Origin: Macrostomum lignano
Lineage: Eukaryota
Reading direction: 5' to 3'
Assembly: GCA_002269645.1 (NCBI GenBank)
Contig: NIVC01002918.1
Coordinates: 1 to 64,000, forward strand
Length of the DNA: 64,000 nucleotides
The position numbers and the translations under genes were made by a program. This document shows, in pieces, positions 10,528-55,128 of the stretch (the stretch's first letter is position 1; every line of letters begins with the position of its first letter). The notes under the pieces are model-generated. The model was not told where the DNA came from. It did no database searches and was given only the letters and a program-made list of their open reading frames with translations.

Positions 10528-11479
10528 ATGGGAAAGCCGGTCAGGTTTAGTCAATTTTGTCAAGTCTCTCACGTAGTATTCGATGACGAGGGAGGAAGGC
10601 CAGACACGAAGCAGGAATGCAGGAGGATGGGAGAGAGCAGGATAAGAGCGGCTTGCGACGGAGCGGACATATTGATCTTCACGGATGTTTCGGTTGATAA
10701 GGGAGGCAAAGGAGGGGGAAGTACGATAACGGCGCGGTGGTCGAAAGGCAAATGGTGGCCGGCGGACAGCTCGCGTCCTCGATGCAGGCGGAGCTTTACG
10801 CGTTGAAGGCGGCAATCAGGTGGCTGGCGATTAACAACAACTGGCACAAAGCTGTGATTGCGACAGACAGCAAAAGCTATTAAAAAGACCAGCAAGAACC
10901 CGATCGTCTGCAGCATTAGAAAAGCGCTGAGCGAGATGGAAGGGCGAGAGATGGTGATGCTGTGGATACCGAGCCACTGCGGGATCGTAGGGAACGAAGT
11001 GGCGGACGAATGGGCTATTCGGGCGGTCAGGGAAGTGAGCAATGAAGGAATTGGAGTCATGGCGAGCACGATGGCGAGGATGGCGAGGAGGCGGTGTAGA
11101 AGGAAGGTGTGGAGGCACGAGAGGATGAGGGCGACGTACGGCGGCTCGGAGGGACCAAGGAAAGATCCGGAGTTCACGAGCAGGAAGGAGGAGGTTAGTT
11201 TTACAAGATGGCGTACGGGACACTCGCTGGAGCTGGCAGCGTTTAGAAAGAGAATCGGGCTGCAGCAGGATGGAAATTGCAGGCAGTGTGGCATGGAGGA
11301 GGAGACCATCGAGCACATGGTGGCCTGCCCGGTTCTGGACAGCTGCTGGAGGGGATGGAGGAGCGGAGTTCTGAGTGAGGTTTGCATGAAGGCGGAGGAA
11401 GCGCTGAAGATGTGGGAGTGGTGGAAGAGGAAACCACCGGAAAGCAGCTAGACATCTACAACAACAACAACAACAACAA

Positions 11480-11482
<3 letters not shown>
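10528..11482 (+). mobile_element. 5'-truncated non-LTR retrotransposon A (RNase H + C-terminal CCHC, (CAA)n tail)
   Basis: IFTD, ELYALKAA, IATDS, WIPSHCGIVGNEVAD (RNase H, frameshifted), CRQC..EETIEHMVAC, stop 11451, (CAA)n 11458-11482 followed directly by (CAG)10. Confidence 0.9.
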
Positions 11483-11513
<31 letters not shown>

Positions 11514-11650
11514 CGCTACAACCGGCCGAGCGCGAGCAGCAGCAGCAGGCGCTACGACCAGCCGAGCTGGAGCAGCAGCAGGAGCAGCCGCAGGAGACGT
11601 AGGAGACGCAGGATCAGTCTACATCAGACTACATCAATTGGGTGAGAGGG
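11483..11650 (+). pseudogene. C-terminal polyQ fragment of the double-C2H2 gene family (inverted copy of 13373-13610)
   Basis: Near-identical to the reverse complement of 13373-13610 (QQQQALQPAERE...QETQDQS..DYINWVRG). Confidence 0.85.
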
Positions 11651-11945
11651 TTCCTAATTCGGAATAGGTTAGCTACAGATAAAATTATTATCCGGCCAAA
11701 TCCTGGTGATGAATCATGACATTGATCACCTTATTAAGTTAACGAAACTTAGTGTTCCTTTTTGTTCCTGTAACAAACTAACAATAATTGTATAACTATA
11801 AAGAACTATTGACTGTAAAACAATAACAACTATAACAACTATAACAACTATAACAACTATATCAAGTATATCAAGTATAAAAATTATAGCAACTATAATC
11901 TATCAATTATAGCTTATAGTTGTAGCTTATATCTATAGTTATAGC

Positions 11946-12106
11946 CATGGGCGGCGGGAGCTTGTGCCCCCCCCCAGAAAATGAGTCCAATTTGTTGTGC
12001 TTTTTCTGATTTTAGGCCCTAATTAGCAGTTACAAAGGTACCTGTGCCCCTTTGCCCTGTGCCCAGTGCCCCCCCCCCCCAAAAATGTTAGGCTCCGCCG
12101 CCCCTG
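11946..12106. mobile_element. hAT-like MITE, 161 bp, 8-bp TSD
   Basis: Imperfect TIRs CATGGGCGGCGGGAGC / GCTCCGCCGCCCCTG; GTTATAGC is duplicated at 11938-11945 and 12107-12114. Confidence 0.85.
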
Positions 12107-12199
12107 GTTATAGCTTATAACAACTATAACAATTAAAGAACTATTAACTATAAAACAGTAATTGTAATTTCGATAGGTTATCTGTTAATTGTTTGAAAT

Positions 12200-12865
12200 C
12201 AATCAAATCGGTCACTTTCGCTTCAACGCACGCCTTGTTGGCATAGTTTTTTTCCTTCAACTCCGAAAGTCCTTGCAATATGTTTTGCAATCGTTCAGCG
12301 AGCTCGTCCGGGCATTGTTTCCTCCATTTCGATAGGTTTCCTTAACCTAGTAAGTTTCATTTTTTCTAAATTTCCAGTATTAAGAAGCCAATCAGAAAAG
12401 TGCCATAGGATAAATTTTAAATTCCGAAATCGAAACTGCTCTGCGACTTTGGTGCTCTCCTCTGATTGAGTCACGGCAATGTGCGTATTCGTGCCATAGA
12501 CGCTAAGGAAGTTGCCACCAAATGCCACTGAGTCCTCGGGGGTGAAGACTGCATGGATCCACCCTGCCGGCACCAGCAATGTGTTTCTTGGCTGCAGCAC
12601 AACACGGTAGACTGGGCCTGTTGCTGTTTCGTCCAGGAAAGCATCCGAGTCGGCAGTTTGCCAGTGCTCATATGCGCGGATGTTTCGCTCAGTAGGCAGC
12701 ATTAGATAAGAAATTTTACAGCCGCTGGCTAGCGTGAACCAAAAGTCGCTTCCACCTAGATCTATGTGAAAATTGGTAAATGATTTCTTCGCACTGATCA
12801 GCACTGATTCGGGAAGAGCTGATTATAAGCGGCATAAATTATTAATGCTAAATTTGGCATTCGGA
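12200..12865 (-). pseudogene. KDM2/KDM7(PHF8)-like JmjC histone demethylase domain, copy 1
   Basis: SFTNFHIDLGG...GCKISYL.LPT...VPAGWIHAVFTPEDSVAFGGNFL; the H-x-D...H metal ligands and 2-OG Lys are retained; in-frame stops at 12823 and 12295. Confidence 0.9.
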
Positions 12866-13240
12866 AATACCGACGTCTCGCTAATCACAGCGACGGTAAT
12901 GTTTGGATCCTCGTCCACCAGAGCCCTGACAGCAGCGATGTTGGCTTCGGTCACAGCTGTGCTGGGTCGTCCAGACCGGGGGTCGTCGTTCAAGGAGGCC
13001 CGTCCGGCGTTGATGGACTCTATCCACCTGGCGACCGTGCGATAGGAAGGGGCTTGGTCCCCGACTACCTGGACCAGGTCTGCATGGATTTTGACCGCGC
13101 TTTCTCCGAGTCGTGAGCGCAAGAAAACGTAGAATTGCCACTGGTCTGGTTGCACTGGCTCCATTTTTGGCAGATTGTAAAACACCACCTTGCGTTGGCC
13201 ACGCACAAGTATAACACATTCGAGGGAAAAAAGTCATACT
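12866..13240 (-). mobile_element. Mariner (Tc1/mariner) transposase N-terminal double-HTH fragment
   Basis: MEP...GESAVKIHADLVQVVGDQAPSYRTVARW...SLNDDPRSGRPSTAVT.ANIAAVRALVDEDPNITV is the mariner PAI/RED signature; ATG at 13164; the DDD domain is absent. Confidence 0.88.
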
Positions 13241-13316
13241 CTATGGTTAAAACCAATATATGTCGGCGATTTCGTAAAAAAATTTCATCGCTTTGTGATA
13301 TGTACTTTTAGAGATA

Positions 13317-13979
13317 TTAGGTCAGTTGCCAAAACTTTTTGAATGCCCCTCGTAGGAACCCTCTCACCCAATTTATGTAATCTGATTTAGACTGATCCTG
13401 CGTCTCCTGCGTCTCCTGCGGCTGCTCCTGCTCCAGCTCGGCTGGTCGTAGCGCCTGCTGCTGCTGCTGCTCGAGCTCGGCCGGTTGTAGCGCCTGCTGC
13501 TGCTGCTGCTGCTCGCGCTCGGCCGGTTGTAGCGCCTGCTGCTGCTGCTGCTGCTCGCGCTCGGCCGGTTGTAGCGCCTGCTGCTGCTGCTGCTGCTGCT
13601 GCTCGGCTTGGTGCCACGTTGCAGGATGCGGTGGCAGTGGTCGGCCATTAACAATCTCTGTGCGGGCCACAGCTAGATAGGCTCGTGCGTACTCGCGTGC
13701 CTGCACTTGATGCTCTTTGCCCTTTATGGGCTTTCCCTTATGCTCATCGAGCTCCGGGTGGTGGCTTCTGTAGTGCGAGCGGAGCAGAACGCACGCCTCT
13801 CTACACACACAGCACATGCCGTGACCAGAGGTAACTGATCGCTCGAAGGTCGCAAACCATAAGGTCGCTGCGTCATCTTCGACGCGATGATCTGGGTGTC
13901 GACTTCTAGCATGGCATGCCAAGTTGTCTTTTCGCATTTCCGCTTCGCAGATGACGCAGTTTACATGGATTGATGGCAT
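13317..13979 (-). CDS. Intact intronless 220-aa protein: two C2H2-type Zn fingers, RPLPPHPxxWH motif, polyQ repeats
   Basis: CVIC.AEMRKDNLACHARSRH and CCVC...HYRSHH; ATG to stop is open; paralogs elsewhere in the window. Confidence 0.8.
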   Translation of the reverse strand: MPSIHVNCVICEAEMRKDNLACHARSRHPDHRVEDDAATLWFATFERSVTSGHGMCCVCREACVLLRSHYRSHHPELDEHKGKPIKGKEHQVQAREYARAYLAVARTEIVNGRPLPPHPATWHQAEQQQQQQQQALQPAEREQQQQQQALQPAEREQQQQQQALQPAELEQQQQQALRPAELEQEQPQETQETQDQSKSDYINWVRGFLRGAFKKFWQLT

Positions 13980-14435: not shown

Positions 14436-15060
14436 TTTATTAGAACGATTTGAGAAATTGAGATTGAAAGCGATTGATTAAATATTGGTTTTTGCAACGT
14501 ACACAGGTAAGGAGGGTAAGATTGAAAACAATTGATTACAACTTGGCTTTAACAACATACATAGGTATAGTAGGTAGGAGAGAGAATTATAGATTAAGAT
14601 TGAAAGTTAAACCAAATGTACACAATTCTTGTCCAGTGGTCAAAAGGCAGAATCAGGGGCGGTAGCTAGCTTAGGTAATTGAACGTCAAGCTAAGTGTAC
14701 AAAGCGTGCACGACTGTGTCACTCACTGTTCAGAAAACGCGGAGAACGTGACCTGCACCACTATGTTGTAATTGGGTGTTGAGATTCGAGGTCTGAGCTT
14801 TAATGTGCAGGGCCTCGAGAATTCTAAGTTTGGCGTCAGTATGGCTTTGGTCAATGATTTTAAAGTGTTCTTCTGGTTTGCAGTCATTGCAGTTAGTGCA
14901 TTCAAGGAGGTGAGTTTGTATAGCAGATGGTTTGAGCCAGTGTTCCCTGATCCTCGTGTGTAGGTGTCTTTTGGTTTTCCCCACGTAGGAGACGCTCTGG
15001 TCCACAGAGCAGTTAAATTGGTAGACAACACCTGCACGCAGAGTACAAGGAACACGCGAC
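14400..15060 (-). mobile_element. Penelope-like element 3' fragment (GIY-YIG endonuclease + 3'UTR)
   Basis: VVYQFNC...SYVGKTKRHLHTRIREH...LRILEALHIK...LNTQ; hammerhead core in the downstream UTR. Confidence 0.88.
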
Positions 15061-15290
15061 TTTAATCTGCTAACAAAGTTCCCAATCTTGTTCGTGTGGA
15101 AGACGACCCGGATGTTACGATTGAAAGAGGCAAAGAATTGCCTCTTTCAATTGCCTGCATTGTAATTTTGATAGGTTATCTGCTAATTATTCGAAATCAA
15201 TCAAATCGGCCACTTTCGCTTCAACGCACGCCTTGTTGGCACAGTTTTTTCCTTCAACTCCTTAATTTCGACAATTTATTCATACTATAC
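15060..15290 (-). pseudogene. Third fragment of the JmjC gene (C-terminal part)
   Basis: 15160-15262 is homologous to 12170-12265, immediately downstream of JmjC copy 1. Confidence 0.65.
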
Positions 15291-16873: not shown

Positions 16874-16930
16874 ATGTTGTTGCCTGACCCTAAACATTGC
16901 TCAAACTAATTTCACAGCGCTTGGGGCCCC

Positions 16931-17968
16931 CCATGCACTTGCTGCTAATGCTTGAGCTACACCAACGGCTCCATTATTTCTAACGCCTACATTCTAATTC
17001 TTACTTACTCGATACCTTCTTAACAAATGATGCTGCACCATTTATGACGAGGTGACAACAAACAATGAAACTCAATCTGAAACGTGCGAAATTTAACAGT
17101 CCCAGACTTCTATTGTTCCTATTAAATTTGAAACAGTGGGACAAGGCCTCCTGCAGAGCAGCCCATAGAAATCTGAAACGTGCGAAATTTAACAGTCCCA
17201 GACTTCTTTTGTTCCTATAAAATTTGAAACAGCGGGACAAGGCCTCTTGCAGAGCAGGCCCATTGAAATTTTCTGGTGCCCAAGCTAATATTGGCTTTTA
17301 GAGGATTAACACATACCGTACAGGCCTAATTTTGCGCTCTATTCCTAAATATTTACACGTTGCTAACTGAGCGCAGGGCTACAACATAAAACTAAACATT
17401 ATGGAAACGCTTGCGTAAATAAGCGAAAATCGGTATCCTACAAGGCAACACGCGAATAATTCGATAAGCTAAGCGGGAGGGAATTAAGCAATCACGGTCA
17501 AATGGTCAATCCACCACTCAGCGGGGGTTAAAAGGGAGACTGACTACTAGTAAATAGACCTTCTCGGTTCTGTAGTCTATGATTGCGTGAGTGCCAGCTA
17601 GAAAAGCGCTGCCCTGACCCTAACGGCCTGCGTGTGAAAACATTCAAGGCTTATTTCTGAAAGTCATTTAGTTCCAATCTATTGTTACTATGGTTGAAGG
17701 TTACAGTTGAGGGACTTTCTATTCATATATTTTCCAATAATTGCTTGTGTTGTTAACCTTTAAAATTCGTCGAGATTTGTTACTATTTGGCTATGACGCA
17801 TTCACTCTGCTAGTTTCGTATCACCATTGTCTTGTAAACTTTTGGCAATACTAATTGCTTAAATGGCTTTCGACAAGCATAAAGGTCAAAGGTCAAACGC
17901 TGTTGTTATGTCATGCACGCGCACATGGAGATCGATATTTATGCATACACATAGTCAAATATAGACCC
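16931..17968 (+). repeat. ~1-kb repeat, inverted copy at 35507-36427
   Basis: Colinear reverse-complement similarity; this copy has an extra ~95-bp internal tandem duplication (17075-17255). Confidence 0.9.
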
Positions 17969-18312
17969 TAACCCAAACCCAAACCCTAACCCTAACCCTA
18001 ACCCTTCCCATATTTCCCATAGTTGACAATGACCCCCCGCTCATAACGATGATCCATAATATGACCGCAGATCTCCCAGATCCATATGTTACATCTATAT
18101 ATTTAGCCAGAGTGGTAAAATATCATCCCTAGCTGACACTTTATTCCCAGTAGACATTTTATTCCCAGCAGCCAATTTAGCTCCAACTAACAATCCTCAG
18201 ATGAAATTTCAAACAGAATTTTATTTGCTCTTGTAAATCTCAAAGTGTCCAATTATTTGTATATATTAAATTTTAAATACTACGATTGTAATTAATTATA
18301 CGAAGAGCTTAC

Positions 18313-20049: not shown

Positions 20050-20144
20050 TTTCGTGCAAAGAAATTACTTAACTTCGATTTTACTGCGAGTGCCTTTACT
20101 TATATACCCTAACCCTAACCCTGACCCTAAATTTTTAGGAGTTG

Positions 20145-20275: not shown

Positions 20276-20909
20276 CGCTTAGCAGTCAGCCAAAAGGCAA
20301 TAATTAATTATCAATCTCACACCCGAAAACAAGATTCGAAATTTTGTACTCTACCGTGGTCCTACAAGCCAAAGCCCGATCTACCCTAGCCCGACAGCTT
20401 ACAGGGAAAAGATGTCAACGGGAGCAACTTTAGGCCGATCTCGAAGAAGCAAGCGATCCGCCTGGCGCCAGTGATGCTTCTCCGTTGGACTTGTCAATTT
20501 CAAGAGGCAATCAAGAACGCCAGAGACTACTAGGTCTAGGGTTTGCTTGTTTGAATCACTTACTTATATTATTATTTCGCTTTAATTATTTTATCAATCT
20601 AACTTATTACGCATCATATTTTTAGCTGTTTACTGCCTTTGTAATTACACATTTTTATACATGTATTAAAAATACGCGCTGCTCTTTTACATGTAATTAT
20701 CAATTTATCTGGTATTAATTAATTGTCATACTAGAAGACCATGAAATTCGTGTCGCAGTTTTTGCCTTCTTATCTCTTTTTCAAGCGTGTTTATTATGCA
20801 CAGGAACTGCTGGCTACTTAGTAGAAAAATTAGATAGAAATTTAGTAAATTTTCTAAGAAATTTAAATAGTAAGTAGCGTGCGGTAAGGCTGATTGATGA
20901 TACTCTACC

Positions 20910-21250
20910 AAATGCCACTGAGTCCTCGGGGGTGAAGACTGCATGGATCCACCCTGCTGGCACCAGCAATGTGTCTCTTGGCTGCAGCACAACACGGTAG
21001 ACTGGGCCTGTTGCTGTTTCGTCCAGGAAAGTATCCGAGTCGGCAGCTTGCCAGTGCTCATATGCGCGGATGTTTCGCTCAGTAGGCAGCATTAGATAAA
21101 AAAATTTACAGGCGCTGGCTAGCGTGAACTAAATGTCGCTTCCACCTAGATCTATGTGAAAATTGGTAAATGATTTCTTCGCACTGATCAGCACTGATTC
21201 TGGAACAGCTGATTCTAAGCGGCATAAATTATTAATGCTAAATTTGGTGA
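20910..21250 (-). pseudogene. KDM2/7-like JmjC domain, copy 2 (premature TAG, 3' truncated)
   Basis: Highly similar to 12520-12860; ends after EDSVAFG. Confidence 0.9.
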
Positions 21251-24210: not shown

Positions 24211-24829
24211 GCCAATCGGCAAATACAATTAAAAGCCAAAGGATCGATTTGGTAGCTTTATTATATAGCAGTTAAAACTGGACATCTACATGACATTGGT
24301 CGCTTATCCAATTGACGGAGCTTTGACCCTATACATACATATTTGGCTGTCTACAATTGGCTAGAAAGTGGGGTGGGGTCAGTGGGGTGGGGTCGTAGTT
24401 GGGGTCTCTTTCGCACGTTGCACCCAAAGAAAAGAGTTGTGAAAACAAAAGATTAGTAGCATGAGAAAGTTATAGAGTGAGTTGCTTAGGAAACGGAAGG
24501 GGGACAACGGGGTCGAGTATGGTTGAGAAAAAGGGTCAGTAAAGCCAGAGAGGTAGAGATGGATGAAAATATGAGACACAACTGAGATAGAAGATCTATC
24601 AATCATCTATCAATCTATCATCTATCATCTATCAATCTATCAATCTATCAATCATTTATTCCGTCAATCAATCATCAATGTTTTGTTGCCTATGCTGTCC
24701 CTCTTTTGTCCTTATTTGCCCCCTATCTTGGGCCGTCCCGTGGCCGACCCTAACCCTAACCTTAATTAACCCTAACCCACCGATAAAATAATGTTTTATG
24801 GTTTCTTCAATAGAACTCAGAAGCCGTTG

Positions 24830-27800
24830 TTCTCAGGGTTATGGAGCTCACTCTTCTGTCTTTAGTTTGAGCCGCTCTAACGGCCTTAAAAGCGTTCTCA
24901 GTGACTCAAAAAGCGTTCTCAGGGACTCAAAAAGCGTTCTCAGGGACTCAAAAAGCGTTCTCAGGGACTAAAAAAGCGTTCTCAGGGACTAAAAAAGCGT
25001 TCTCAGGGATTCAAAAAGCGTTCTCAGGGACTCAAAAAGCGCTCTCAAGGTTATTTATGGAGCTCACTTTTCTGTTTTTAGTTTGAGCAGCTCTAACGGC
25101 CTCAAAAAGCGCTCTCAAGGTTATGGAGCTCACTTTTCTGTTTTTAGTTTGAGCAGCTCTAACGGCCTCAAAAAGCGTTCTCAGGGATTCAAAAAGCGTT
25201 CTCAGGGACTCAAAAAGCGCTCTCAAGGTTATTTATGGAGCTCACTTTTCTGTTTTTAGTTTGAGCAGCTCTAACGGCCTCAAAAAGCGCTCTCAAGGTT
25301 ATGGAGCTCACTTTTCTGTTTTTAGTTTGAGCAGCTCTAACGGCCTCAAAAAGCGTTCTCAGGGACTCAAAAAGCGCTCTCAAGGTTATTTATGGAGCTC
25401 ACTTTTCTGTTTTAAATTTGAGCAGCTCTAACGGCCTCAAAAAGCGTTCTCAGGGACTCAAAAAGCGCTCTCAAGGTTATGGAGCTCACTTTTCTGTTTT
25501 TAGTTTGAGCAGCTCTAACGGCCTCAAAAAGCGTTCTCAGGGACTCAAAAAGCGCTCTCAAGGTTATTTATGGAGCTCACTTTTCTGTTTTTAGTTTGAG
25601 CAGCTCTAACGGCCTCAAAAAGCGTTCTCAGGGACTTAAAAAGCGTTCTCAGGGACTCAAAAAGCGTTCTCAGGGACTAAAAAAGCGTTCTCAGGGACTC
25701 AAAAAGCGTTCTCAGGGACTCAAAAAGCGTTCTCAGGGACTCAAAAAGCGCTCTCAAGGTTATGGAGCTCACTTTTCTGTTTTTAGTTTGAGCAGCTCTA
25801 ACGGCCTCAAAAAGCGTTCTCAGGGACTCAAAATGCGTTCTCAGGGACTCAAAAAGCGTTCTCAGGGACTCAAAAAGCGCTCTCAAGGTTATGGAGCTCA
25901 CTTTTCTGTTTTTAGTTTGAGCAGCTCTAACGGCCTTAAAAAGTGTTATCAGGGACTCATAAAGCGTTCTCAGGGACTCAAAAAGCGTTCTCAGGGACTC
26001 AAAAAGCGCTCTTAAGGTTATTTATGGAGCTCACTTTTCTGTTTTTAGTTTGAGCAGCTCTAACGGCCTCAAAAAGCGCTCTCAAGGTTATGGAGCTCAC
26101 TTTTCTGTTTTTAGTTTGAGCAGCTCTAACGGCCTTAAAAAGTGTTATCAGGGACTCATAAAGCGTTCTCAGGGACTCAAAAAGCGTTTTCAGGGACTCA
26201 AAAAGCGCTCTTAAGGTTATTTATGGAGCTCACTTTTCTGTTTTTAGTTTGAGCAGCTCTAACGGCCTCAAAAAGCGCTCTCAAGGTTATGGAGCTCACT
26301 TTTCTGTTTTTAGTTTGAGCAGCTCTAACGGCCTCAAAAAGCGTTCTCAGGGACTCAAAAAGCGTTTTCAGGGACTCAAAAAGCGCTCTCAAGGTTATGG
26401 AGCTCACTTTTCTGTTTTTAGTTTGAGCAGCTCTAACGGCCTCAAAAAGCGTTCTCAGGGACTTAAAAAGCGTTCTCAGGGACTCAAAAAGCGCTCTCAA
26501 GGTTATGGAGCTCACTTTTCTGTTTTTAGTTTGAGCAGCCCTAACGGCCTTAAAAAGCGTTCTCAGGGACTCAAAAAGCGTTCTCAGGGACTCAAAAAGC
26601 GTTCTCAGGGACTCAAAAAGCGTTCTCAGGGTTATGGAGCTCACTTATCTGTTGTTAGTTTTAGCAGCTCTAACGGCCTCAAAAAGCGCTCTCAGGGACT
26701 CAAAATGCGTTCTCAGGGACTAAAAAAGCGTTCTCAGGGACTCAAAAAGCGTTCTCAGGGACTCAAAAAGCGCTCTCAAGGTTATTTATGGAGCTCACTT
26801 TTCTGTTTTTAGTTTGAGCAGCTCTAACGGCCTTTAAAAGCGTTCTCAGGGACTCATAAAGCGTTCTCAGGGACTCAAAAAGCGCTCTCAAGGTTATGGA
26901 GCTCACTTTTCTGTTTTTAGTTTGAGCAGCTCTGACGGCCTTAAAAAGTGTTATCAGGGACTCAAAAAGCGTTCTCAGAGACTCAAAAAGCGTTCTCAGA
27001 AACTAAAAAAGCGTTCTCAGGGACCCAAAAAGCGTTCTCAGGGACTAAAAAAGTGTTCTCAGGGACTAAAAAAGCGTTCTCAGGGACTCAAAATGCGTTC
27101 TCAGGGACTAAAAAAGCGTTCTCAGGGACTCAAAAAGCGTTCTCAGGGACTCAAAAAGCGCTCTCAAGATTATGGTGCTCACTTTTCTGTTTTTAGTTTG
27201 AGCAGCTCTAACGGCCTTAAAAAGTGTTATCAGGGACTCATAAAGCGTTCTCAGGGACTCAAAAAGCGTTCTCAGGGACTCAAAAAGCGTTCTCAGGGAC
27301 TCAAAATGCGTTCTCAGGGACTCAAAAAGCGTTCTCAGGGACTCAAAAAGCGCTCTCAAGGTTATGGAGCTCACTTTTCTGTTTTTAGTTTGAGCAGCTC
27401 TGACGGCCTTAAAAAGTGTTATCAGGGACTCATAAAGCGTTCTCAGGGACTCAAAAAGCGTTCTCAGGGACTCAAAAAGCGCTCTCAAGGTTATTTATGG
27501 AGCTCACTTTTCTGTTTTTAGTTTGAGCAGCTCTAACGGCCTCAAAAAGCGCTCTCAAGGTTATGGAGCTCACTTTTCTGTTTTTAGTTTGAGCAGCTCT
27601 AACGGCCTCAAAAAGCGTTCTCAGGGACTCAAAAAGCGTTCTCAGGGACTCAAAAAGCGTTCTCAGGGACTCAAAAAGCGCTCTCAAGGTTATGGAGCTC
27701 ACTTTTCTGTTTTTAGTTTGAGCAGCTCTGACGGCCTTAAAAAGTGTTATCAGGGACTCAAAAAGCGTTCTCAGAGACTCAAAAAGCGTTCTCAGGGACT

Positions 27801-30800
27801 CAAAAAGCGTTCTCAGGGACTCAAAATGCGTTCTCAGGGACTCAAAAAGCGTTCTCAGGGACTCAAAAAGCGCTCTCAAGGTTATGGAGCTCACTTTTCT
27901 GTTTTTAGTTTGAGCAGCTCTAACGGCCTTAAAAAGTGTTATCAGGGACTCATAAAGCGTTCTCAGGGACTCAAAAAGCGTTCTCAGGGACTCAAAAAGC
28001 GTTCTCAGGGACTCAAAATGCGTTCTCAGGGACTCAAAAAGCGTTCTCAGGGACTCAAAAAGCGCTCTCAAGGTTATGGAGCTCACTTTTCTGTTTTTAG
28101 TTTGAGCAGCTCTGACGGCCTTAAAAAGTGTTATCAGGGACTCAAAAAGCGTTCTCAGGGACTCAAAAAGCGTTCTCAGGGACTCAAAAAGCGTTCTCAA
28201 GGTTATGGAGCTCACTTTTCTGTCTGTCTTAGTTAACCCTTAACCCTAATGGTGAGTTGCCATGAGTACAATTTCCATGAGTTTCGCAGCTCAGCTCATG
28301 AGGTAGCCAGCTCGCTCACACTTTGGCTGCACAAAAATTTATAAATTTGTACTCAATTGTACTCAATTGTGCGGCACTATGACGGTTATGCAGCCAGCAT
28401 CAAACCCCGCCAGCTACCCTCAATTAGAATTTTGTGGGGATCGCTAAAATTGACATGCAGTTTTGCTACTGCAAGAAGTAATATATAAGTGGATGTTTGT
28501 ATCTTAGTAAAATTTTGTAGTAAAAATGAAAATTGTTAATGTCCAAAACTTGTGAATTTGAATTCTTGGCAAATCATATTCTCAGATGTAAAGCTGCTGT
28601 CTGTTTTTTCTGCACAAGCTAACCCATTAATGACCTAAATAAAATTCACCAATATCGATCAGTGTAGTCTGTACTCATCAAGATTGAGTCTGTACCTCAC
28701 CAAATAAATATCGTTTAGCTGCACCAATTCTGTTTTTAGTTCTGAGCTCACTTTTCTGTTTTTAGTTTGAGCAGCTCTAACGGCCTTAAAAAGTGTTATC
28801 AGGGACTCATAAAGCGTTCTCAGGGACTCAAAAAGCGTTCTCAGGGACTCAAAAAGCGCTCTTAAGGTTATTTATGGAGCTCACTTTTCTGTTTTTAGTT
28901 TGAGCAGCTCTAACGGCCTCAAAAAGCGCTCTCAAGGTTATGGAGCTCACTTTTCTGTTTTTAGTTTGAGCAGCTCTAACGGCCTCAAAAAGCGTTCTCA
29001 GGGACTTAAAAAGCGTTCTCAGGGACTCAAAAAGCGCTCTCAAGGTTATGGAGCTCACTTTTCTGTTTTTAGTTTGAGCAGCCCTAACGGCCTTAAAAAG
29101 CGTTCTCAGGGACTCAAAAAGCGTTCTCAGGGACTCAAAAAGCGTTCTCAGGGACTCAAAAAGCGTTCTCAGGGTTATGGAGCTCACTTATCTGTTGTTA
29201 GTTTTAGCAGCTCTAACGGCCTCAAAAAGCGCTCTCAGGGACTCAAAATGCGTTCTCAGGGACTAAAAAAGCGTTCTCAGGGACTCAAAAAGCGTTCTCA
29301 GGGACTCAAAAAGCGCTCTCAAGGTTATTTATGGAGCTCACTTTTCTGTTTTTAGTTTGAGCAGCTCTAACGGCCTTTAAAAGCGTTCTCAGGGACTCAT
29401 AAAGCGTTCTCAGGGACTCAAAAAGCGCTCTCAAGGTTATGGAGCTCACTTTTCTGTTTTTAGTTTGAGCAGCTCTGACGGCCTTAAAAAGTGTTATCAG
29501 GGACTCAAAAAGCGTTCTCAGAGACTCAAAAAGCGTTCTCAGAAACTAAAAAAGCGTTCTCAGGGACCCAAAAAGCGTTCTCAGGGACTAAAAAAGTGTT
29601 CTCAGGGACTAAAAAAGCGTTCTCAGGGACTCAAAATGCGTTCTCAGGGACTAAAAAAGCGTTCTCAGGGACTCAAAAAGCGTTCTCAGGGACTCAAAAA
29701 GCGCTCTCAAGATTATGGTGCTCACTTTTCTGTTTTTAGTTTGAGCAGCTCTAACGGCCTTAAAAAGTGTTATCAGGGACTCATAAAGCGTTCTCAGGGA
29801 CTCAAAAAGCGTTCTCAGGGACTCAAAAAGCGTTCTCAGGGACTCAAAATGCGTTCTCAGGGACTCAAAAAGCGTTCTCAGGGACTCAAAAAGCGCTCTC
29901 AAGGTTATGGAGCTCACTTTTCTGTTTTTAGTTTGAGCAGCTCTAACGGCCTCAAAAAGTGTTATCAGGGACTCATAAAGCGTTCTCAGGGACTCAAAAA
30001 GCGTTCTCAGGGACTCAAAAAGCGCTCTCAAGGTTATTTATGGAGCTCACTTTTCTGTTTTTAGTTTGAGCAGCTCTAACGGCCTCAAAAAGCGCTCTCA
30101 AGGTTATGGAGCTCACTTTTCTGTTTTTAGTTTGAGCAGCTCTAACGGCCTCAAAAAGCGTTCTCAGGGACTCAAAAAGCGTTCTCAGGGACTCAAAAAG
30201 CGTTCTCAGGGACTCAAAAAGCGCTCTCAAGGTTATGGAGCTCACTTTTCTGTTTTTAGTTTGAGCAGCTCTGACGGCCTTAAAAAGTGTTATCAGGGAC
30301 TCAAAAAGCGTTCTCAGAGACTCAAAAAGCGTTCTCAGGGACTCAAAATGCGTTCTCAGGGACTCAAAAAGCGTTCTCAGGGACTCAAAAAGCGCTCTCA
30401 AGGTTATGGAGCTCACTTTTCTGTTTTTAGTTTGAGCAGCTCTAACGGCCTTAAAAAGTGTTATCAGGGACTCATAAAGCGTTCTCAGGGACTCAAAAAG
30501 CGTTCTCAGGGACTCAAAAAGCGTTCTCAGGGACTCAAAATGCGTTCTCAGGGACTCAAAAAGCGTTCTCAGGGACTCAAAAAGCGCTCTCAAGGTTATG
30601 GAGCTCACTTTTCTGTTTTTAGTTTGAGCAGCTCTGACGGCCTTAAAAAGTGTTATCAGGGACTCAAAAAGCGTTCTCAGGGACTCAAAAAGCGTTCTCA
30701 GGGACTCAAAAAGCGTTCTCAAGGTTATGGAGCTCACTTTTCTGTCTGTCTTAGTTAACCCTTAACCCTAATGGTGAGTTGCCATGAGTACAATTTCCAT

Positions 30801-36805: not shown

Positions 36806-38210
36806 AGAGAAGAGAAAAAGAGAGGAGAGTTGAGGAGAGGAGAGGAGAGGAGAGGAGAGGAGAGGGGAGGAGAGGAGAGGAGAGGAGAGGAGAGGAGAGG
36901 AGAGGAGAGGAGAGGAGAGGAGAGGAGAGGAGAGGAGAGGAGAGGAGAGGAGAGGAGAGGAGAGGAGAGGAGAGGAGAGGAGAGGAGAGGAGAGGAGAGG
37001 AGAGGAGAGGAGAGGAGAGGAGAGGAGAGGAGAGGAGAGGAGAGGAGAGGAGAGGAGAGGAGAGGAGAGGAGAGGAGAGGAGAGGAGAGGAGAGGAGAGG
37101 AGAGGAGAGGAGAGGAGAGGAGAGGAGAGGAGAGGAGAGGAGAGGAGAGGAGAGGAGAGGAGAGGAGAGGAGAGGAGAGGAGAGGAGAGGAGAGGAGAGG
37201 AGAGGAGAGGAGAGGAGAGGAGAGGAGAGGAGAGGAGAGGAGAGGAGAGGAGAGGAGAGGAGAGGAGAGGAGAGGAGAGGAGAGGAGAGAGAGGAGAGGA
37301 GAGGAGAGGAGAGGAGAGGAGAGGAGAGGAGAGGAGAGGAGAGGAGAGGAGAGGAGAGGAGAGGAGAGGAGAGGAGAGGAGAGGAGAGGAGAGGAGAGGA
37401 GAGGAGAGGAGAGGAGAGGAGAGGAGAGGAGAGGAGAGGAGAGGAGAGGAGAGGAGAGGAGAGGAGAGGAGAGGAGAGGAGAGGAGAGGAGAGGAGAGGA
37501 GAGGAGAGGAGAGGAGAGGAGAGGAGAGGAGAGGAGAGGAGAGGAGAGAGGAGAGGAGAGGAGAGGAGAGGAGAGGAGAGGAGAGGAGACGAGACGAGAT
37601 AAGAGGAGAAAAGGAGAGGAGAGGAGAGGAGAGGAGAGGAGAGGAGAGGAGAGGAGAGGAGAGGAGAGGAGAGGAGAGGAGAGGAGAGGAGAGGAGAGGA
37701 GAGGAGAGGAGAGGAGAGGAGAGGAGAGGAGAGGAGAGGAGAGGAGAGGAGAGGAGAGGAGAGGAGAGGAGAGGAGAGGAGAGGAGAGGAGAGGAGAGGA
37801 GAGGAGAGGAGAGGAGAGGAGAGGAGAGGAGAGGAGAGGAGAGGAGAGGAGAGGAGAGGAGAGGAGAGGAGAGGAGAGGAGAGGAGAGGAGAGGAGAGGA
37901 GAGAGAGAGGAGAGGAGAGGAGAGGAGAGGAGAGGAGAGGAGAGGAGAGGGGAGAGGAGTGAGGAGAGGAAGACGAGAGAGGAGAGGAGAGGTCAGGAGA
38001 GGAGAGAAAAGGGGAGAGGAGTGAGGAGAGGAAGACGAGAGAGGAGAGGAGAGGTCAGGAGAGGAGAGAAAAGGGGAGAGGAGTGAGGAGAGGAAGACGA
38101 GAGAGGAGAGGAGAGGTCAGGAGAGGAGAGAAAAGGAGAGAAGTGAATAGAGGAGAGTAGAGGAGAGGACAAGAGAGAATATGAGAAGAGAGGTGAGAGC
38201 TGAGAGCTGA
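36806..38210. repeat. (GGAGA)n pentanucleotide polypurine tract, ~1.1 kb nearly pure then degenerate
   Basis: Direct reading; explains the RRGEE ORF. Confidence 0.98.
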
Positions 38211-50850: not shown

Positions 50851-50981
50851 GACAGCACGGATGACGCTACCATTTACTTTACCTGGTCACAATTTCTGCA
50901 TTGCAACAACAAAGCTCCCGTACGTATGCCCACTTCCTGGATCATGCAGTCTTGAATGAGCTTCGTAATCGGAACTGCTGC

Positions 50982-52346
50982 TTCTTCTTCTTCTTCTTTG
51001 GAGCGCCTCCGTTCCGGCTAGGCCGATCTGGAGGGGGCGTGGATCCCGAGGGGAGCCGCCCCATGCTGCGTAGTAGTCTGACGATGGCCTCCGGGGACCC
51101 CATCAGGTCGCCCGGGCCAGGCCGCTTCTTCTCCGGAAATGGTCACCGCGGGGGCAGTGGAGGAGCAGATGCTCAGCCGAGTCCTCCGCGCCACACTCGG
51201 GGCAGGCGGGGGACTGTTCCAAGCCCAGGCGGTGTCTGGTGCTAAAGTTGATGGTGCTGGCGCCGGACCGAAGCTGGTTGACCAGGACCTGGAGACGTCT
51301 AGGGAGGCTGGTCGGCGGCTGCAGTCTCGGCGGCAGGACTCTGGCGTCCAGCATTCTGCGAGAGCGACGAGCGGCTGCCCTTGCCGCGTCAAGCTCGATC
51401 GGCACCGCCTGTTGGTCGAGCCCGGCCGCGTTGGCGGCGGCGCGGTCGGCCGCCTCGTTGCCGGCGACCCCGCAGCGGGATGGCACCCAAGCGAAGTGAA
51501 CAGGGCGGTTCATGGCGATCAGGTTGAGGAGTTTACTCCAGCAGTCCGCGGCAACTGAGTTTTGCTGGCACAGGGGTCCGGCGCTGAGCGCCTGGATGGC
51601 GCTGAGGCTGTCCGTGGCGATAGTTATGGCGCCCGTGGGCGGTGCCGGGTGGCGGGCGATGTCTAAGGCCTCCCTGATGGCGCAGAGTTCTGTGGTAAAG
51701 CTGCTGCAGAGCGCGCCAGCCTGAGTCGCTCGCTGCCGCCGATGCTGAGTTCGACTCTGGTCTTGCCGCGGTTCTCGTTGGGGCACAGCGTGAAAGTGCT
51801 GTAACTGCACTTCCCAGTGCTGAGCACGAACTTGTTCTGGTCGCACCAGCGGGCCACGGAGTGCAGGGCCGGTTGCACGATGTGCCCGCAGCTTTCGAGG
51901 TCCGTATGGCGCGCCAGGATGGCCGAGTCGTCGGCATACAGACTGATCTCGGCTTCCGGCGATGCTTCCGCGATGGCAGTTGGCAGGTCGTTAACGTAGA
52001 CCAGCCAAAGCAGAGGGGCGATCACCGAGCCTTGGGGCAGGCCTTCCCGGAAGATGCGCTCTCTGCTGAGGCTATTGCCGAATCGGACGCGCGCTCTCCT
52101 GTCGCTTAGGAAGCTGTTGGTCCAGCGCAGGACGCAGGCGGGGACTCCCAGCTTCTCGAGCTTGCAGATCAGAGACTTCCGCCACACCTTGTCGTAGGCT
52201 CTGCTGAAGTCGAGTAAACAGAGGATCGCTCTAAGCGCAGGAGTCTCTTCCAGCCCGTCAAAGATAAGCTGGGCGATGCGGGCGATCTGCTCTTCGCACG
52301 AGGAAACCAGCTTGGACTTTGCTGAGAGTGCCCTTGGATTCCAGCA
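50982..52346 (-). mobile_element. 5'-truncated non-LTR element B (RT domains + partial RNase H + CCHC, (GAA)n tail), 11-bp TSD
   Basis: LDFSRAYDKVW, GLPQGSVIAP, YADD; internal deletion to TELCAI..IATDS..WVPSRCGVAGNEAAD; CPECGAEDSAEHLLLHC. GGAACTGCTGC is duplicated at 50971-50981 and 52347-52357. Confidence 0.92.
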
Positions 52347-52359
52347 GGAACTGCTGCTG

Positions 52360-53754
52360 CTTCTTCTTCTTCTTCTTCTACGCAGCCCCCGCGTCGCCGC
52401 TGTCCGGCGGCTGGGGGGGGGCGACCTGCAGGCCGCCCCATCATCCTCAGATACCGGCAGATTCCGCCCGCGTCGTTGAGGTCGAGAGGGTGAGCAAGGC
52501 GGGCGGAGTCTCCGCGTGGACACTGCTGCAGGAGGTGCTCTTCTGTGTCTTCGTCTCCGCAGTCCGGACAGAGCGGAGTCTCGGTAAGGCCGATACGGTA
52601 GCGGGTGGGCGCGCAGGCTGTGCTGCAGCCGGCCCTCAATTGGCAAACCGCCACCGTCTCGCCACGAGTCAGGCCGCCGTAGCGCTTCCAGGGCGAGCTA
52701 CGATTCGAGAGCTTGAGATCGAGGTGTCGCCTGGCTCGTTTGATGGCAGCCCTGGCGGCTTCGAAGGCGATGGGCTGGTCCTGCGTCAGGTCCGAAGCCC
52801 GGTTCGCCGTCTTGTCGGCTCTTTCGTTGCCATCGACGCCGACGTGGGCCGGCACCCAGGTAATGCGGACCGGGCGGGCTTCTTGACTGAGCAGGCTCCA
52901 CACCAGCTGTCCCATGGGCTCGCGTTGGTCAGCTGGCCCGCGCTGCAGGGTGAGGATGCCCGCCAAGCTGTCCGTGAGAATGTCGATGCTGCCCCCGTGT
53001 GGTTGCTGGAGCTGTAGGCAGCGGCGGATGCCTAGAGCTATAGCCGCTAGCTCCGCCGTCGTGCTGCTGCAGATGGAGCCAGCGGCTGTCGTGTGTACTT
53101 CGCCCCACAGGAGGGTGTGCAGGACGGCCGCGCCACGGCCGTCCCGGTAGCCGTCCGTGGCGCTGCCGTCTGTCCAGATGACGATATCGTGTTGAGGTCT
53201 GGATTCCAGGGCGTTGATGGCTCTCTCCCGTCTGATGCTGTCCGGCACTTTGCGGCCGCAGGTGACCTGCAGGCTGGTGTCGAAGCTGACTTCGCTGGGT
53301 GACTGCCATGGCGGCTCGGGCATTGGGAAGGGGGCGCGCTTCCCCGCTGGCTCGAAGGCGTTGATGCCGAGCTCCAGTGCGGCGCGCCTCCAGCAACCAC
53401 GGAAAGGCCTGCGGTAGTCGCTCTCCAGCAGGACCCGGTCATCCACCGGGTGTTGCTCCCGTAGCCACGCCTCGTGAGCACGGGATTTCAGGCGGGGCGG
53501 GCAGGGTCTAGCGGCAGTCTGGTGCACCGGGACCTCCCCGGGCAGCCTCAGAGCCCGTTCCCGCAAGGTCGCCGCTCTCTCCAGGATCCGGTGTCCGATG
53601 GGCGGCAGGTCTGCGGCCGCGAGGAGCGCCCTGACGTTCGTGGGCTTAATGCACCCCGAGACGATCCTGGCGCAGCAGAACTGTTGCCGTTCGATGAGAA
53701 GCCTGCTGCTCGGCGCCGCAAAGGCACCCCAGATTCCGCACGCGTAGTCGGCGT
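52360..53754 (-). mobile_element. 5'-truncated non-LTR element C (RNase H with DEDD intact + CCHC, (GAA)n tail) inside a (CAG)n tract
   Basis: WTDGS, TAELAAI, LTDS, WVPAHVGVDGNERAD, CPDC..DTEEHLLQQC; (CAG)9 on the 5' side (53755-53781) and (CAG)3 on the 3' side (52351-52359). Confidence 0.92.
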
Positions 53755-54639
53755 GCTGCTGCTGCTGCTGCTGCTGCTGCTATGGAAGTCTCCGTCGGAC
53801 AAGGGTGCAGCCTGCTCGATATTTACGTCATCCTCGACGTCACCCCGATGATCTCCGTCTCCATTATCATCCAACCATCCTGCCTCCTCTAACAGCACAT
53901 TGGGGAATCCGTTTGCTCAACCTCCAGGTGGATAGTCGGTTCTGCAGCACCGTGGTCTTCTACGGGGATCTCATTTTAGGTCGGCATCAGCAGCTTTGCG
54001 CTCCCTGCGCCGATAAACCTTCCACTGGGCCGCCCTGTCAGCCATAATAGCGTTGCAGACATTTTCGGACAAGTATTTTGTGATGAGGTGCTTGTTAAAT
54101 AAATAGACTCCTACTCTAAACTGCCAGTGTTCGTACAACAACTACTAGCTACATTGACTGAAAAGGGTATAAAAATAATTGAGACGACGATACACGAGAA
54201 TTTAAAAATCCACATGCAGTCCAAAAACGTGCGTACATACTTGTGTATACACGTGTATATACTTGCAATCTTACAGTGGGAACCAAGAACCACCAGAACT
54301 CTGTTGAATCAGGAGGTAAAACTCTTAATTGTTGCACATTTTTGAAGGCTCGCTCGTTTACGTGTGTACTCATGCGTTGTCGAGGCTTTAATTCCTGTTA
54401 AATCTACATCATTCTAGTGGTCCTTGGTTCATACTGCTATATAACCCTGGCGTCCACCGGCGTCACATACTCATGAACGGAGGTAGCATCTATTCCTCAT
54501 TTGAACGGATGTAGCAGTTAAATAATATTCTCATCCAAGATATTCACTCATGAACGGAGGTAGCAGCTATTGCTCATTTGGAGTACATGATATTTGGAGT
54601 ACGCTGTCTAGCAAGGCAGACCAGTTAATCGGATTCGGG

Positions 54640-54783
54640 CCTTGGCGGAGAGGCAGTGGGTGGCTCAAGGCGCCATTAACATTAACGCGGGCGGAGCGGT
54701 CGCAAAGGAAGGCAAAGCACCATCTGACCAGGGGGCCGGGGCCTGGAGGTCCAGCATGATGTGGACGAGCATTTGCCTCCACA
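54640..54783 (-). mobile_element. Non-LTR RT fragment D starting directly after a (CAG)4 tract
   Basis: VWRQMLVHIMLDLQAPAP/LVRWCFAFLCDRSARVNVNGALSHPLPLRQG corresponds to the RT domain 3-4 region. Confidence 0.7.
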
Positions 54784-55128
54784 CTGCTGCTGCTGCTATG
54801 GAAGTCTCCGTCGGACAAGGGTGCAGCCTGCTCGTTATTTACGTCATCCTCGACGCACCCCGATGGTCTCCGTCTCCATCATCATCCGACCATCCTGCCT
54901 CCTCTAACAGCACATCGGGGGAATCCATCTACTCAACCTCCATATGGACAGTCGGTTCAGCAGTACCGTGGTCTTCAACAGGGACACCAGCCGCCTTATT
55001 TTGGGCGTCCTGTCGCTGTTAAGCGAGACGCTCACGACGCCTCCGTTGGCGAAGTGGGTCACCGCGACGCAACCGTCCTGTTGGGTCGGCATCGGCGTCT
55101 TTTGCCAAGCGAGAAAGCGGCACCTGTT
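54784..55128 (-). pseudogene. Duplicate of the CACTA-like transposase N-terminal exon
   Basis: Highly similar to 53782-53960; acceptor TTTTCTTAACAG near 55128; internal stops. Confidence 0.75.

What the first reader, a model, noticed from the sequence alone, without database searches (positions are those of the whole stretch)
10528..54795. RNase-H non-LTR retrotransposons repeatedly inserted at (CAG)n tracts, in one orientation
Four distinct non-LTR fragments abut CAG runs on their sense strand. A: (CAA)n tail then (CAG)10 of a polyQ exon. B: 11-bp TSD GCAGCAGTTCC. C: flanked by (CAG)9 and (CAG)3, stacked on B. D: starts right after (CAG)4 in the paralogous exon. Microsatellite-targeting non-LTRs are established (e.g. 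Waldo/Mino at AC-type repeats, SART/TRAS at telomeric repeats); a CAG-specific group that hits coding polyQ/polyS tracts would be unusual. Target specificity is an inference from n=4.
Basis: partly seen in the sequence, partly recalled or inferred. Interest (0 to 1): 0.75.

Follow-up and report, generated by a model that had tools for sequence, protein, structure and literature searches.

The report
LINE fragments sitting in CAG repeats
Four broken copies of RNase H-carrying LINE retrotransposons, from at least three families, each border a CAG repeat in the same orientation; this fits a preference for inserting into CAG tracts, a target not yet described for LINEs, but one window cannot prove it.

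Summary
The window holds exactly four fragments of RNase H-bearing non-LTR elements (A on the + strand; B, C and D on the - strand), and every one borders a CAG run on its own sense strand. A has its stop codon, then (ACA)9, then (CAG)10. C lies between (CAG)8-9 and (CAG)3. B lies directly downstream of C, between two copies of GCAGCAGTTCC. D starts right after (CAG)4. Positions followed by a CAG hexamer make up only about 0.3% of each strand, so chance is not credible.

The CAG runs at A's 3' side and at the 5' sides of C and D belong to the flanking repeated sequences, not to the elements' tails. The tails themselves are (CAA)n and (GAA)n, as in distant relatives.

What stays unproven: strict CAG specificity rests on only three loci, two of them 1 kb apart. 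The flanks are not shown to be coding exons: they have no homologues, and both exon2 copies are frameshifted. A is not shown to be a simple insertion, because its 5' flank is unrelated to exon1. The endonuclease and the RT clade are unknown, since no 5' part is present. I could reach no close relatives and no other genomic copies.

Verdict: a plausible new target motif for a known kind of element, the microsatellite-targeting LINE. Moderate interest.

The parts
10528..11451 (+). Element A: 5'-truncated, decayed 3' part of a non-LTR ORF2 (RNase H plus C-terminal Cys/His motif), ending in stop TAG at 11449-11451
   Evidence: Pfam RNase_H E=3.4e-9 and zf-RVT E=1.7e-4, the latter 22.6 bits against a 27.5-bit cut-off. 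Two frameshifts and stops in the three-frame translation. Nearest relatives are P0004/L006 at 41% and P0002/L004 at 37%.
11458..11484 (+). A's own tail, (ACA)9 = (CAA)n, 6 nt after the stop codon
   Evidence: Relative L006 has TAA followed directly by (AAC)5, and L015 ends in (AAC)5.
11483..11512 (+). (CAG)10 abutting A's tail, in phase with it (CAA CAA CAG CAG); first CAG tract of the exon1-like copy 1
   Evidence: The paralogue has (CAG)8 at the same place, 13578-13601 on the - strand.
11483..11719 (+). 'Exon1' copy 1: the 3' part of a CAG-containing 36-42 bp minisatellite ORF, lacking everything upstream of its first CAG tract
   Evidence: 91.6% identity to the inverted copy at 13353-13513. 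Reading frame read.
13317..13979 (-). 'Exon1' copy 2: 220-aa ORF with two C2H2-like motifs and [(CAG)5-8 + 24 nt] x4, interrupted near its 3' end by a mariner end. It serves as the unoccupied reference for A's junction.
   Evidence: No homologue among 1.84e9 representative proteins. The only Pfam match is a weak low-complexity hit.
54796..55123 (-). 'Exon2' copy upstream of D: acidic ORF remnant ending ...DGDFH(S)n, with one stop and one frameshift
   Evidence: 91.6% identity to 53768-53968.
54784..54795 (-). (CAG)4 at D's 5' junction
54610..54783 (-). Element D: about 175-bp fragment of a non-LTR RT (the VWR...W..FL.DR.ARV...G region), truncated at both ends and frameshifted
   Evidence: 41% over 34 aa to B's RT, and 35% to the RT of L036. 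No Pfam hit.
53782..54040 (-). 'Exon2' second copy, upstream of C; its homology with the first copy ends inside the CAG tract
53756..53781 (-). (CAG)8 (9 AGC units) at C's 5' junction
52379..53755 (-). Element C: 5'-truncated in the RT thumb region, then RNase H and a CxxC...H....C motif. The ORF is open over all 472 codons and runs into the tail, so this looks like the youngest copy.
   Evidence: Pfam RNase_H E=5.6e-12; translation.
52361..52378 (-). C's tail, (GAA)6
   Evidence: GAA-rich tails also occur in relatives L005 and L019.
52347..52360 (-). GCAGCAGCAG-TTCC between C and B: the remaining CAG tract, and the 5' copy of B's 11-bp duplication GCAGCAGTTCC (52357-52347)
50999..52350 (-). 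Element B: 5'-truncated in RT (starts ...FLLESKG...QAGF). It has RT motifs, an internal deletion into RNase H, a CxxC...H....C motif, frameshifts and one stop.
   Evidence: Pfam RVT_1 E=1.1e-20 and RNase_H E=5.4e-8.
50981..50998 (-). B's tail, (AAG)6
50971..50981 (-). 3' copy of GCAGCAGTTCC, followed by the unique flank GATTACGAAG...

Best explanation
A, B, C and D are dead, 5'-truncated copies of APE-type I-group LINEs. In distant relatives the ORF2 has the order endonuclease, RT, RNase H, Cys/His motif. These elements have almost no 3' UTR and carry short trinucleotide tails, (CAA)n or (AAG)n.

Each copy integrated by target-primed reverse transcription into a pre-existing (CAG)n.(CTG)n tract. 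The first nick was in the CTG strand, so the element's sense strand is always continuous with CAG.

Each insertion splits the tract: (CAG)a-element-tail-(CAG)b. The leftover tract can be hit again, which produced the C-on-B stack in one tract. B, being decayed, probably came first, and the still-open C came later.

Inferred priming logic: the ...CTG-3' primer pairs with two of three bases of an AAG or CAA tail unit. It would pair perfectly if donor transcripts read a few units into the CAG tract downstream of the donor copy, as is known for R1-clade site-specific elements.

Shown: the junctions, the orientation, family diversity, the native origin of the CAG at three junctions, and non-randomness. 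Inferred: endonuclease specificity, the priming mode, and that the preference holds genome-wide.
For: - Every RNase H-LINE fragment in the window abuts CAG on its sense strand.
- CAG-hexamer positions are about 0.3% of each strand.
- C has CAG on both sides, and B has an 11-bp duplication that begins in CAG.
- The CAG at A's 3' side and at the 5' sides of C and D sits at the same position in a paralogous copy of the flank, so it is target sequence and not tail.
- Three or four families are involved: B and C share 41-46% aa identity, and A shares about 30% with both. Their decay differs, with C fully open and A, B and D frameshifted. This points to several events over time.
- Relatives are APE-RT-RNase H ORF2s of about 1250 aa with short microsatellite tails, including (AAC)5 and (GAA)5, and no CAG tracts at their 3' ends.
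- The nearest relative of A (L006, 41%) has TAA-(AAC)5 followed by GACAGCAACAGCAG.
Against: - There are only three independent loci, two of them 1 kb apart in tandem paralogues.
- A's 5' flank is unrelated to exon1, so a plain insertion into exon1 is not shown.
- There is no empty-site copy of exon2. Joining the flanks gives only 30 further open codons, about 24% likely by chance.
- D lacks a 3' end.
- Several CAG tracts in the window are unoccupied (2589-2603, and the inner tracts of exon1).
- At the 3' junctions of B and C the CAG units could come from the RNA.
- No endonuclease sequence is available.
- Distant relatives with the same tail types are not in CAG tracts.
Confidence: 0.55

Rival explanations
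1. The junctions are RNA-level or recombinational chimeras, not endonuclease-targeted insertions. In this view the RT switched template between LINE RNA and a CAG-containing transcript. One version runs from exon1 RNA, copied up to its CAG tract, onto the (CAA)n tail of A RNA. Another runs from the 5' ends of C and D RNA onto exon2 RNA. Alternatively, ectopic recombination or slippage joined CAG-like tracts. CAG would then matter only through microhomology or RNA/DNA hairpins.
For: - It explains why A's 5' flank is not the upstream half of exon1.
- All partners lie in the same orientation, as in known L1 chimeric retrocopies (own knowledge).
- The CAA/CAG and AAG/CAG junctions are in phase and share two of three bases.
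- D's 5' end shows 1-3 nt of possible microhomology.
Against: - It needs the same acceptor position, the 3' edge of the CAG tract, in two separate exon2 events.
- It does not explain the CAG on C's 3' side or B's 11-bp duplication.
- C is intact while B is decayed, which argues against a single composite event.
- No poly(A) or outer duplication was found around the composites.
Confidence: 0.17
2. 'Exon2' is not an exon but the 3' end of another retroelement, X, whose tail is (CAG)n. X-C-B is then a head-to-tail array formed because these LINEs insert into, or jump onto, existing microsatellite tails in general. On this view there is no CAG-specific recognition and no coding sequence is hit.
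For: - The two exon2 copies are homologous exactly up to the CAG run and diverge after it, as copies of a tailed retroelement would.
- The exon2 ORF runs into its CAG run without a stop, just as the ORFs of B and C run into their tails.
- Both copies are decayed and lack homologues.
- The same picture holds for A: an upstream tail abuts a 5'-shortened downstream unit.
Against: - Exon1's CAG tract is clearly internal to its ORF in copy 2.
- X shows no RT, RNase H or Cys/His similarity upstream of the tract.
- X shows no tRNA- or other RNA-derived head.
- Only two copies are known.
- Even under this reading, C, and B or D, still entered a CAG tract.
Confidence: 0.15
3. Endonuclease-independent capture: CAG/CTG tracts form hairpins and break or nick often, and LINE cDNAs are used to patch such lesions. 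The association would then reflect tract fragility, not element specificity.
For: - Endonuclease-independent L1 insertion at DNA lesions and the fragility of CAG tracts are both established (own knowledge).
- A's missing upstream flank and D's truncation at both ends resemble the deletions seen at such events.
Against: - The strict single orientation in 4 of 4 cases, and B's clean 11-bp duplication, are typical of endonuclease-dependent TPRT.
- Other retroelement types in the window (Penelope-like, Ty3/gypsy) do not sit at CAG tracts.
Confidence: 0.08
4. Coincidence or passive accumulation: LINE debris and CAG-rich repeats are both enriched in this transposon graveyard without any mechanistic link.
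For: The window is a dense mosaic of transposons and satellites.
Against: The junctions are exact to the base at three loci, while only about 0.3% of positions qualify. The orientation is uniform.
Confidence: 0.05

Closest known systems
Waldo (ACAY)n and Mino (AC)n, R1-clade microsatellite-specific LINEs of insects (Kojima & Fujiwara 2003/2004, as summarised in PMC3812793)
   Same: They are APE-type LINEs found inside one microsatellite in a fixed orientation. They have no poly(A), and the 3' end is continuous with the target repeat. They belong to the I group, in which RNase H occurs (PMC4640811).
   Different: The target motif here is the trinucleotide CAG. Each element keeps its own distinct trinucleotide tail, (CAA)n or (AAG)n, between the ORF and the target. 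R1-clade membership is untested. The tracts lie inside ORF-like repeated sequences rather than in anonymous microsatellites.
Koshionbo (TTC)n and Kibi (TC)n of teleost fish (Kojima & Fujiwara 2004; PMC3812793)
   Same: These are LINE families specific for a tri- or dinucleotide repeat. Several related families share one target.
   Different: They lack RNase H and belong to a different group (Tx1/L1 group, from my own knowledge). Their target motif also differs.
Dong (TAA)n of the R4 clade, Togen (TG)n of the NeSL clade, and some HERO families (PMC3812793, PMC4640811)
   Same: They are non-LTR elements that target microsatellites.
   Different: They encode a restriction-like endonuclease rather than APE, and have no RNase H downstream of RT. 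They are unrelated lineages.
I factor and other I-group LINEs (I, Nimb, Ingi, Loa, Tad1, Outcast, Loner) with RT-RNase H-Cys/His ORF2 and microsatellite tails, for example (TAA)n in the I factor (own knowledge; clade list from PMC4640811)
   Same: The domain order matches, the 3' UTR is short, and there is a trinucleotide tail instead of poly(A). Metagenomic relatives show the full APE-RT-RNase H ORF2 and a variety of short tails.
   Different: These clades are, as far as I know, not known for microsatellite-specific insertion. The fragments here always abut CAG.
L1-mediated chimeric retrocopies (U6-L1, mRNA-L1) made by RT template switching (own knowledge)
   Same: They consist of a 5' part from another RNA fused in the same orientation to a 5'-truncated LINE.
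   Different: Those junctions are scattered. Here they fall at the same CAG tract repeatedly, and CAG also follows the LINE tails.

Membership tests
Non-LTR retrotransposon, I group (RNase H-bearing) | LINE-type reverse transcriptase domain | tested here: met
   B has RVT_1 at E=1.1e-20. D matches the same RT motif weakly. A and C are truncated downstream of the RT core.
Non-LTR retrotransposon, I group (RNase H-bearing) | RNase H domain downstream of RT, followed by a Cys/His motif | tested here: met
   RNase_H hits in A, B and C (E from 3e-9 to 6e-12 for A and C; 5e-8 for B). CxxC...H....C is aligned in all three.
Non-LTR retrotransposon, I group (RNase H-bearing) | N-terminal APE-type endonuclease | not testable with these tools
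   All four copies are 5'-truncated. Only distant relatives (25-34% identity) show Exo_endo_phos upstream of RT.
Non-LTR retrotransposon, I group (RNase H-bearing) | Placement in a named clade (I, Nimb, Ingi, Loa, R1, Tad1, Outcast, Loner) by RT phylogeny | not tested
   No reference set such as Repbase was available, and only a partial RT (B) is present.
Microsatellite-specific (sequence-specific) LINEs | Copies flanked by the same microsatellite on both sides | tested here: inconclusive
   Met for C, with (CAG)8-9 and (CAG)3, and for B, with (CAG)3 and (CAG)2. For A only the 3' side is seen, and for D only the 5' side.
Microsatellite-specific (sequence-specific) LINEs | Fixed orientation relative to the repeat strand | tested here: met
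   4 of 4 have CAG, not CTG, on the sense strand.
Microsatellite-specific (sequence-specific) LINEs | The majority of genomic copies lie at the target, shown by a genome-wide flank survey | not testable with these tools
   The source genome could not be reached. Exact-ORF look-ups failed, and no relative above 41% identity exists in the protein or metagenome collections.
Microsatellite-specific (sequence-specific) LINEs | The target repeat is not part of the element's own templated tail | tested here: met
   The paralogous flank copies carry the CAG tract at the same position. The tails of relatives lack CAG runs. The few CAG units right after the tails of B and C remain ambiguous.
Insertion into coding polyQ/polyS exons of host genes | The flanks are exons of a real, conserved or expressed gene | tested here: not met
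   Exon1's N-terminus has 0 hits among 1.84e9 representative proteins. ORFs beside exon2 have no homologue and no Pfam domain. Both exon2 copies carry a frameshift or stop. Expression was not testable.

The most novel reading that the evidence does not exclude
A lineage of RNase H-bearing I-group LINEs, old enough to have split into families only 30-45% identical in protein, has kept a strand-specific preference for (CAG)n.(CTG)n tracts. This would be the first CAG-targeting LINE group and the first microsatellite-specific one outside the R1, Tx1, R4, NeSL and HERO lineages. Because CAG tracts are typically coding (polyQ/polySer), its natural targets would include open reading frames.
Probability: 0.25. 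Interest if true: 0.7.

Novelty: new variant of a known kind. Interest (0 to 1): 0.5.

Why it matters
Microsatellite-specific LINEs are known for ACAY, AC, TC, TTC, TAA and TG repeats. None of the reviews or papers I could search lists CAG.

A CAG-directed APE endonuclease and RT would add a new target class. It would also show convergence or long retention of specificity across diverged families.

CAG/CTG tracts are the classic unstable, often coding, repeats. Such elements would therefore be a natural source of interruption and length change in polyQ/polySer tracts. They could also serve as a model for how 3' tail and target pairing guide TPRT.

If instead the pattern comes from template switching or tract fragility, it would illustrate how structured repeats capture LINE cDNAs.

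Tried and rejected
1. Reaching the source genome. Exact look-ups of two window ORFs found nothing.
2. Close relatives of the elements. A protein search with C gave one 30% hit. A profile of A, B and C gave 38 hits, the best 41% to A and 34% to B. A metagenome scan gave 80 loci, all at most about 44% identical over short stretches. None can serve as extra copies of the same families.
3. 3' ends of the relatives. They are useful for defining the tails but show no CAG tracts, apart from the CAG/CAA-rich flank in L006.
4. Whether the flanks are genes. Exon1's N-terminus has no homologue among 1.84e9 representative proteins. The ORFs downstream of B have no homologue and no Pfam domain.
5. Outer target-site duplications around the A+exon1 and exon2+C+B composites. 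Only chance 9-mers turned up.
6. A 42-bp similarity between A's 5' flank and 2718-2759, near an unoccupied (CAG)5. It is just a short dispersed repeat.
7. SINE or RNA-gene origin of exon2. There are no Rfam or tRNA matches.
8. Literature on a CAG-specific LINE. None was found.

I rejected the idea that CAG is simply the tail, because paralogous flanks carry the tract. I rejected a single insertion followed by duplication for C and D, because homology between the two exon2 copies stops inside the CAG tract.


Full report
**Setting.** The window is a transposon-rich stretch of eukaryotic, animal-like DNA, with overall GC around 42% and GC-rich islands. It holds:
- large satellites;
- an ISXO2-like DDE transposase ORF, RPA-like OB folds and a JmjC fragment;
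- a mariner HTH remnant, a Penelope-type GIY-YIG domain and a Ty3/gypsy pol.

No RNA genes were found. I could not identify the organism. Exact look-ups of window ORFs found nothing.

**The observation.** tblastn with the four fragments shows that they are the only RNase H-type LINE pieces in the window.

*Element A* (+ strand, 10528-11451) has RNase_H (E=3.4e-9) and a zf-RVT motif (E=1.7e-4, 22.6 bits, below Pfam's 27.5-bit cut-off), and is frameshifted. Its stop TAG is followed by ACATCT, (ACA)9 and (CAG)10.

From the CAG run onward the DNA is 91.6% identical to an inverted copy at 13353-13513. That copy is part of a 220-aa ORF (13317-13979, - strand), in which a (CAG)8 tract sits at the same position, preceded by unrelated coding sequence. 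So the (CAG)10 next to A belongs to the flank. The (CAA)n run is A's own tail. The nearest relative, L006, likewise has TAA followed directly by (AAC)5.

*On the - strand* the order is as follows.
1. An acidic ORF remnant ('exon2'...DGDFH) ends in (CAG)4. It is followed at once by D, a 175-bp RT fragment that is 41% identical to B's RT motif and 35% to that of L036.
2. About 570 bp further on, a second exon2 copy (91.6% identical) ends in (CAG)8-9.
3. It is followed at once by C. C is 5'-truncated in the RT thumb, has RNase_H at E=5.6e-12, and has 472 open codons running into its tail.
4. C ends in (GAA)6, then GCAGCAGCAG-TTCC.
5. Then comes B (RVT_1 E=1.1e-20, RNase_H E=5.4e-8, an internal deletion and frameshifts). 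B ends in (AAG)6, then GCAGCAG-TTCC, then unique DNA.

GCAGCAGTTCC therefore brackets B.

B and C are 41-46% identical in protein with no DNA similarity. A is about 30% identical to both.

**Is it more than chance?** Positions followed by a CAG-phase hexamer are 0.31-0.35% of either strand. Three independent loci (A; the C/B tract; D) hitting such positions exactly has a probability of about 1e-7. In 310 kb of fetched relatives' loci there are only 12 runs of three or more CAG or CTG units, and none lies at a LINE 3' end.

**Tail or target?** Homologues are distant, at most 41% identical, but they are informative.
- Five full-length relatives encode APE, RT and RNase H in one ORF2 of about 1250 aa; one of them also has a zf-RVT match.
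- They end in short microsatellite tails with varied units: TTA, CACT, AAGGT, CCTAA, AAC and GAA.
- L005, 33-34% identical to B and C, has a GAA-rich tail.

So (CAA)n and (GAA)n are the elements' own tails, and CAG is not a generic tail component.

At three junctions the CAG tract is shared with a paralogous copy of the flank: A's 3' side and the 5' sides of C and D. At those junctions the CAG is target DNA. The two or three CAG units after the tails of B and C could come from either the RNA or the target. In repeat-targeting LINEs these two sources are indistinguishable.

**What is not supported.**
- The flanks are not shown to be host exons. The N-terminal 126 aa of exon1 have no homologue among 1.84 billion representative proteins. 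Its 'polyQ' is a 36-42 bp minisatellite.
- The ORFs downstream of B have no homologue and no Pfam domain.
- Both exon2 copies carry a stop or a frameshift.
- Joining the two flanks of the C+B stack keeps the frame open for only 30 more codons, which is not significant.
- A's 5' flank is unrelated to exon1, and no outer duplication was found. A may be an insertion with loss of the upstream flank, or a chimera.
- D has no 3' end.
- No endonuclease sequence is present.

**Most likely mechanism (confidence about 0.55).** Several families of I-group LINEs integrate by TPRT into (CAG)n.(CTG)n tracts, nicking the CTG strand first. This gives the uniform orientation, the split tracts around C and B, and B's 11-bp duplication beginning in CAG. 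It also allows repeated use of one tract: B is decayed and therefore probably older, while C is still open and probably younger.

The tail units are in phase with CAG and differ from it by one base (AAG and CAA). A ...CTG-3' primer would therefore pair partly with the tail. It would pair fully with transcripts that read into the CAG downstream of a donor copy, the logic known for R1-clade elements (own knowledge). The endonuclease specificity and the priming mode are inference.

**Rivals.**
- RT template switching or recombination at CAG tracts. This explains A's odd 5' flank, but not the CAG 3' of C or B's duplication.
- Exon2 as the (CAG)n-tailed 3' end of another retroelement, with tail-directed stacking. 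The two copies do end exactly at the CAG run, and the ORF runs into it as in B and C. But exon1's tract is clearly internal.
- Endonuclease-independent capture at fragile CAG tracts. The orientation and the duplication argue against it.
- Coincidence, which the statistics reject.

**Comparison with known systems.** Microsatellite-specific LINEs are established:
- Waldo (ACAY), Mino (AC), Kibi (TC), Koshionbo (TTC) and Dong (TAA) (PMC3812793);
- Togen (TG) and some HERO families (PMC4640811).

[quoted passage not shown] I found no report of a CAG-specific LINE in the held library. If the preference is real, this is a new target motif, possibly in a clade not known for microsatellite specificity. 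That makes it a new variant of a known kind. Clade assignment and genome-wide specificity remain to be tested.

**Verdict.** Interest is moderate, 0.5. The decisive test is a genome-wide survey of flanks and empty sites, plus recovery of full-length copies.

Noticed in passing
window 24888-33400: About 8.5 kb of satellite built from a 21-bp unit (CTCAAAAAGCGTTCTCAGGGA) mixed with a 66-bp unit. It is organised in a higher-order repeat of about 2.5 kb: three near-identical blocks end at 28233, 30755 and 33385 with TTAACCC and TTGTACTCAA motifs.
   Followed up: no
window 36820-38197: (GAGAG)n pentanucleotide array of about 274 copies (1.4 kb), with extreme purine/pyrimidine strand asymmetry.
   Followed up: no
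window 7291-7328, 17965-18005, 20106-20130, 24747-24778: Short interstitial runs of the telomere-type hexamer (TTAGGG/ACCCTA). Some lie near Penelope-like GIY-YIG remnants such as 14733-15146 on the - strand (GIY-YIG, E=1e-4).
   Followed up: partly
window 11483-11719 (+) and 13317-13979 (-): Inverted, tail-to-tail pair of an orphan ORF with two C2H2-like motifs and a [(CAG)n + 24 nt] minisatellite. Copy 2 is cut at a TA by a mariner end (HTH_48 remnant at 12826-13233), and that mariner is itself truncated by a JmjC-domain fragment. The ORF has no homologue in 1.84e9 representative proteins.
   Followed up: partly
window 12517-12857 and 20907-21247: A JmjC-domain-coding fragment is duplicated at 96% identity 8 kb apart. 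This suggests a gene fragment captured or carried by a mobile element or by a segmental duplication.
   Followed up: no
window 8617-9879 (-): Intact-looking 392-421 aa ORF with an ISXO2-like (IS1595-type) DDE transposase domain (E=5e-25). It lies next to RPA-like OB-fold ORFs at 6790-8108 (+).
   Followed up: partly
window 11944-12100: About 155-bp insert with terminal inverted repeats (GGGCGGCGGGAGC ... GCTCCGCCGCCC) and poly-C/poly-G runs, sitting inside an (AACTATAAC)n array. It looks like a MITE.
   Followed up: no
window 52361-52420 and 50981-51040 (- strand): The ORFs of C and B have no in-frame stop before the tail and read through (GAA)n/(AAG)n and CAG. In C a TAG lies one frame off, directly before the tail. 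A and its relative L006 have their stop 6 and 0 nt before the tail. These elements therefore have essentially no 3' UTR.
   Followed up: partly
L006 660-780: In the closest relative of A (41%, from an ENA metagenome contig) the block [(AAC)n ... GACAGCAACAGCA(G/A) ATGTAAGTAAAGCAC] occurs twice in tandem. This may be a tail-only second insertion with a duplication of about 29 bp starting in CAG/CAA-rich DNA.
   Followed up: partly
window 61665-63227 (+): Ty3/gypsy-type pol remnant (RT_RNaseH_2, Integrase_H2C2, rve) with frameshifts. A 357-aa coiled-coil ORF without clear homology lies at 60051-61121 (-).
   Followed up: partly
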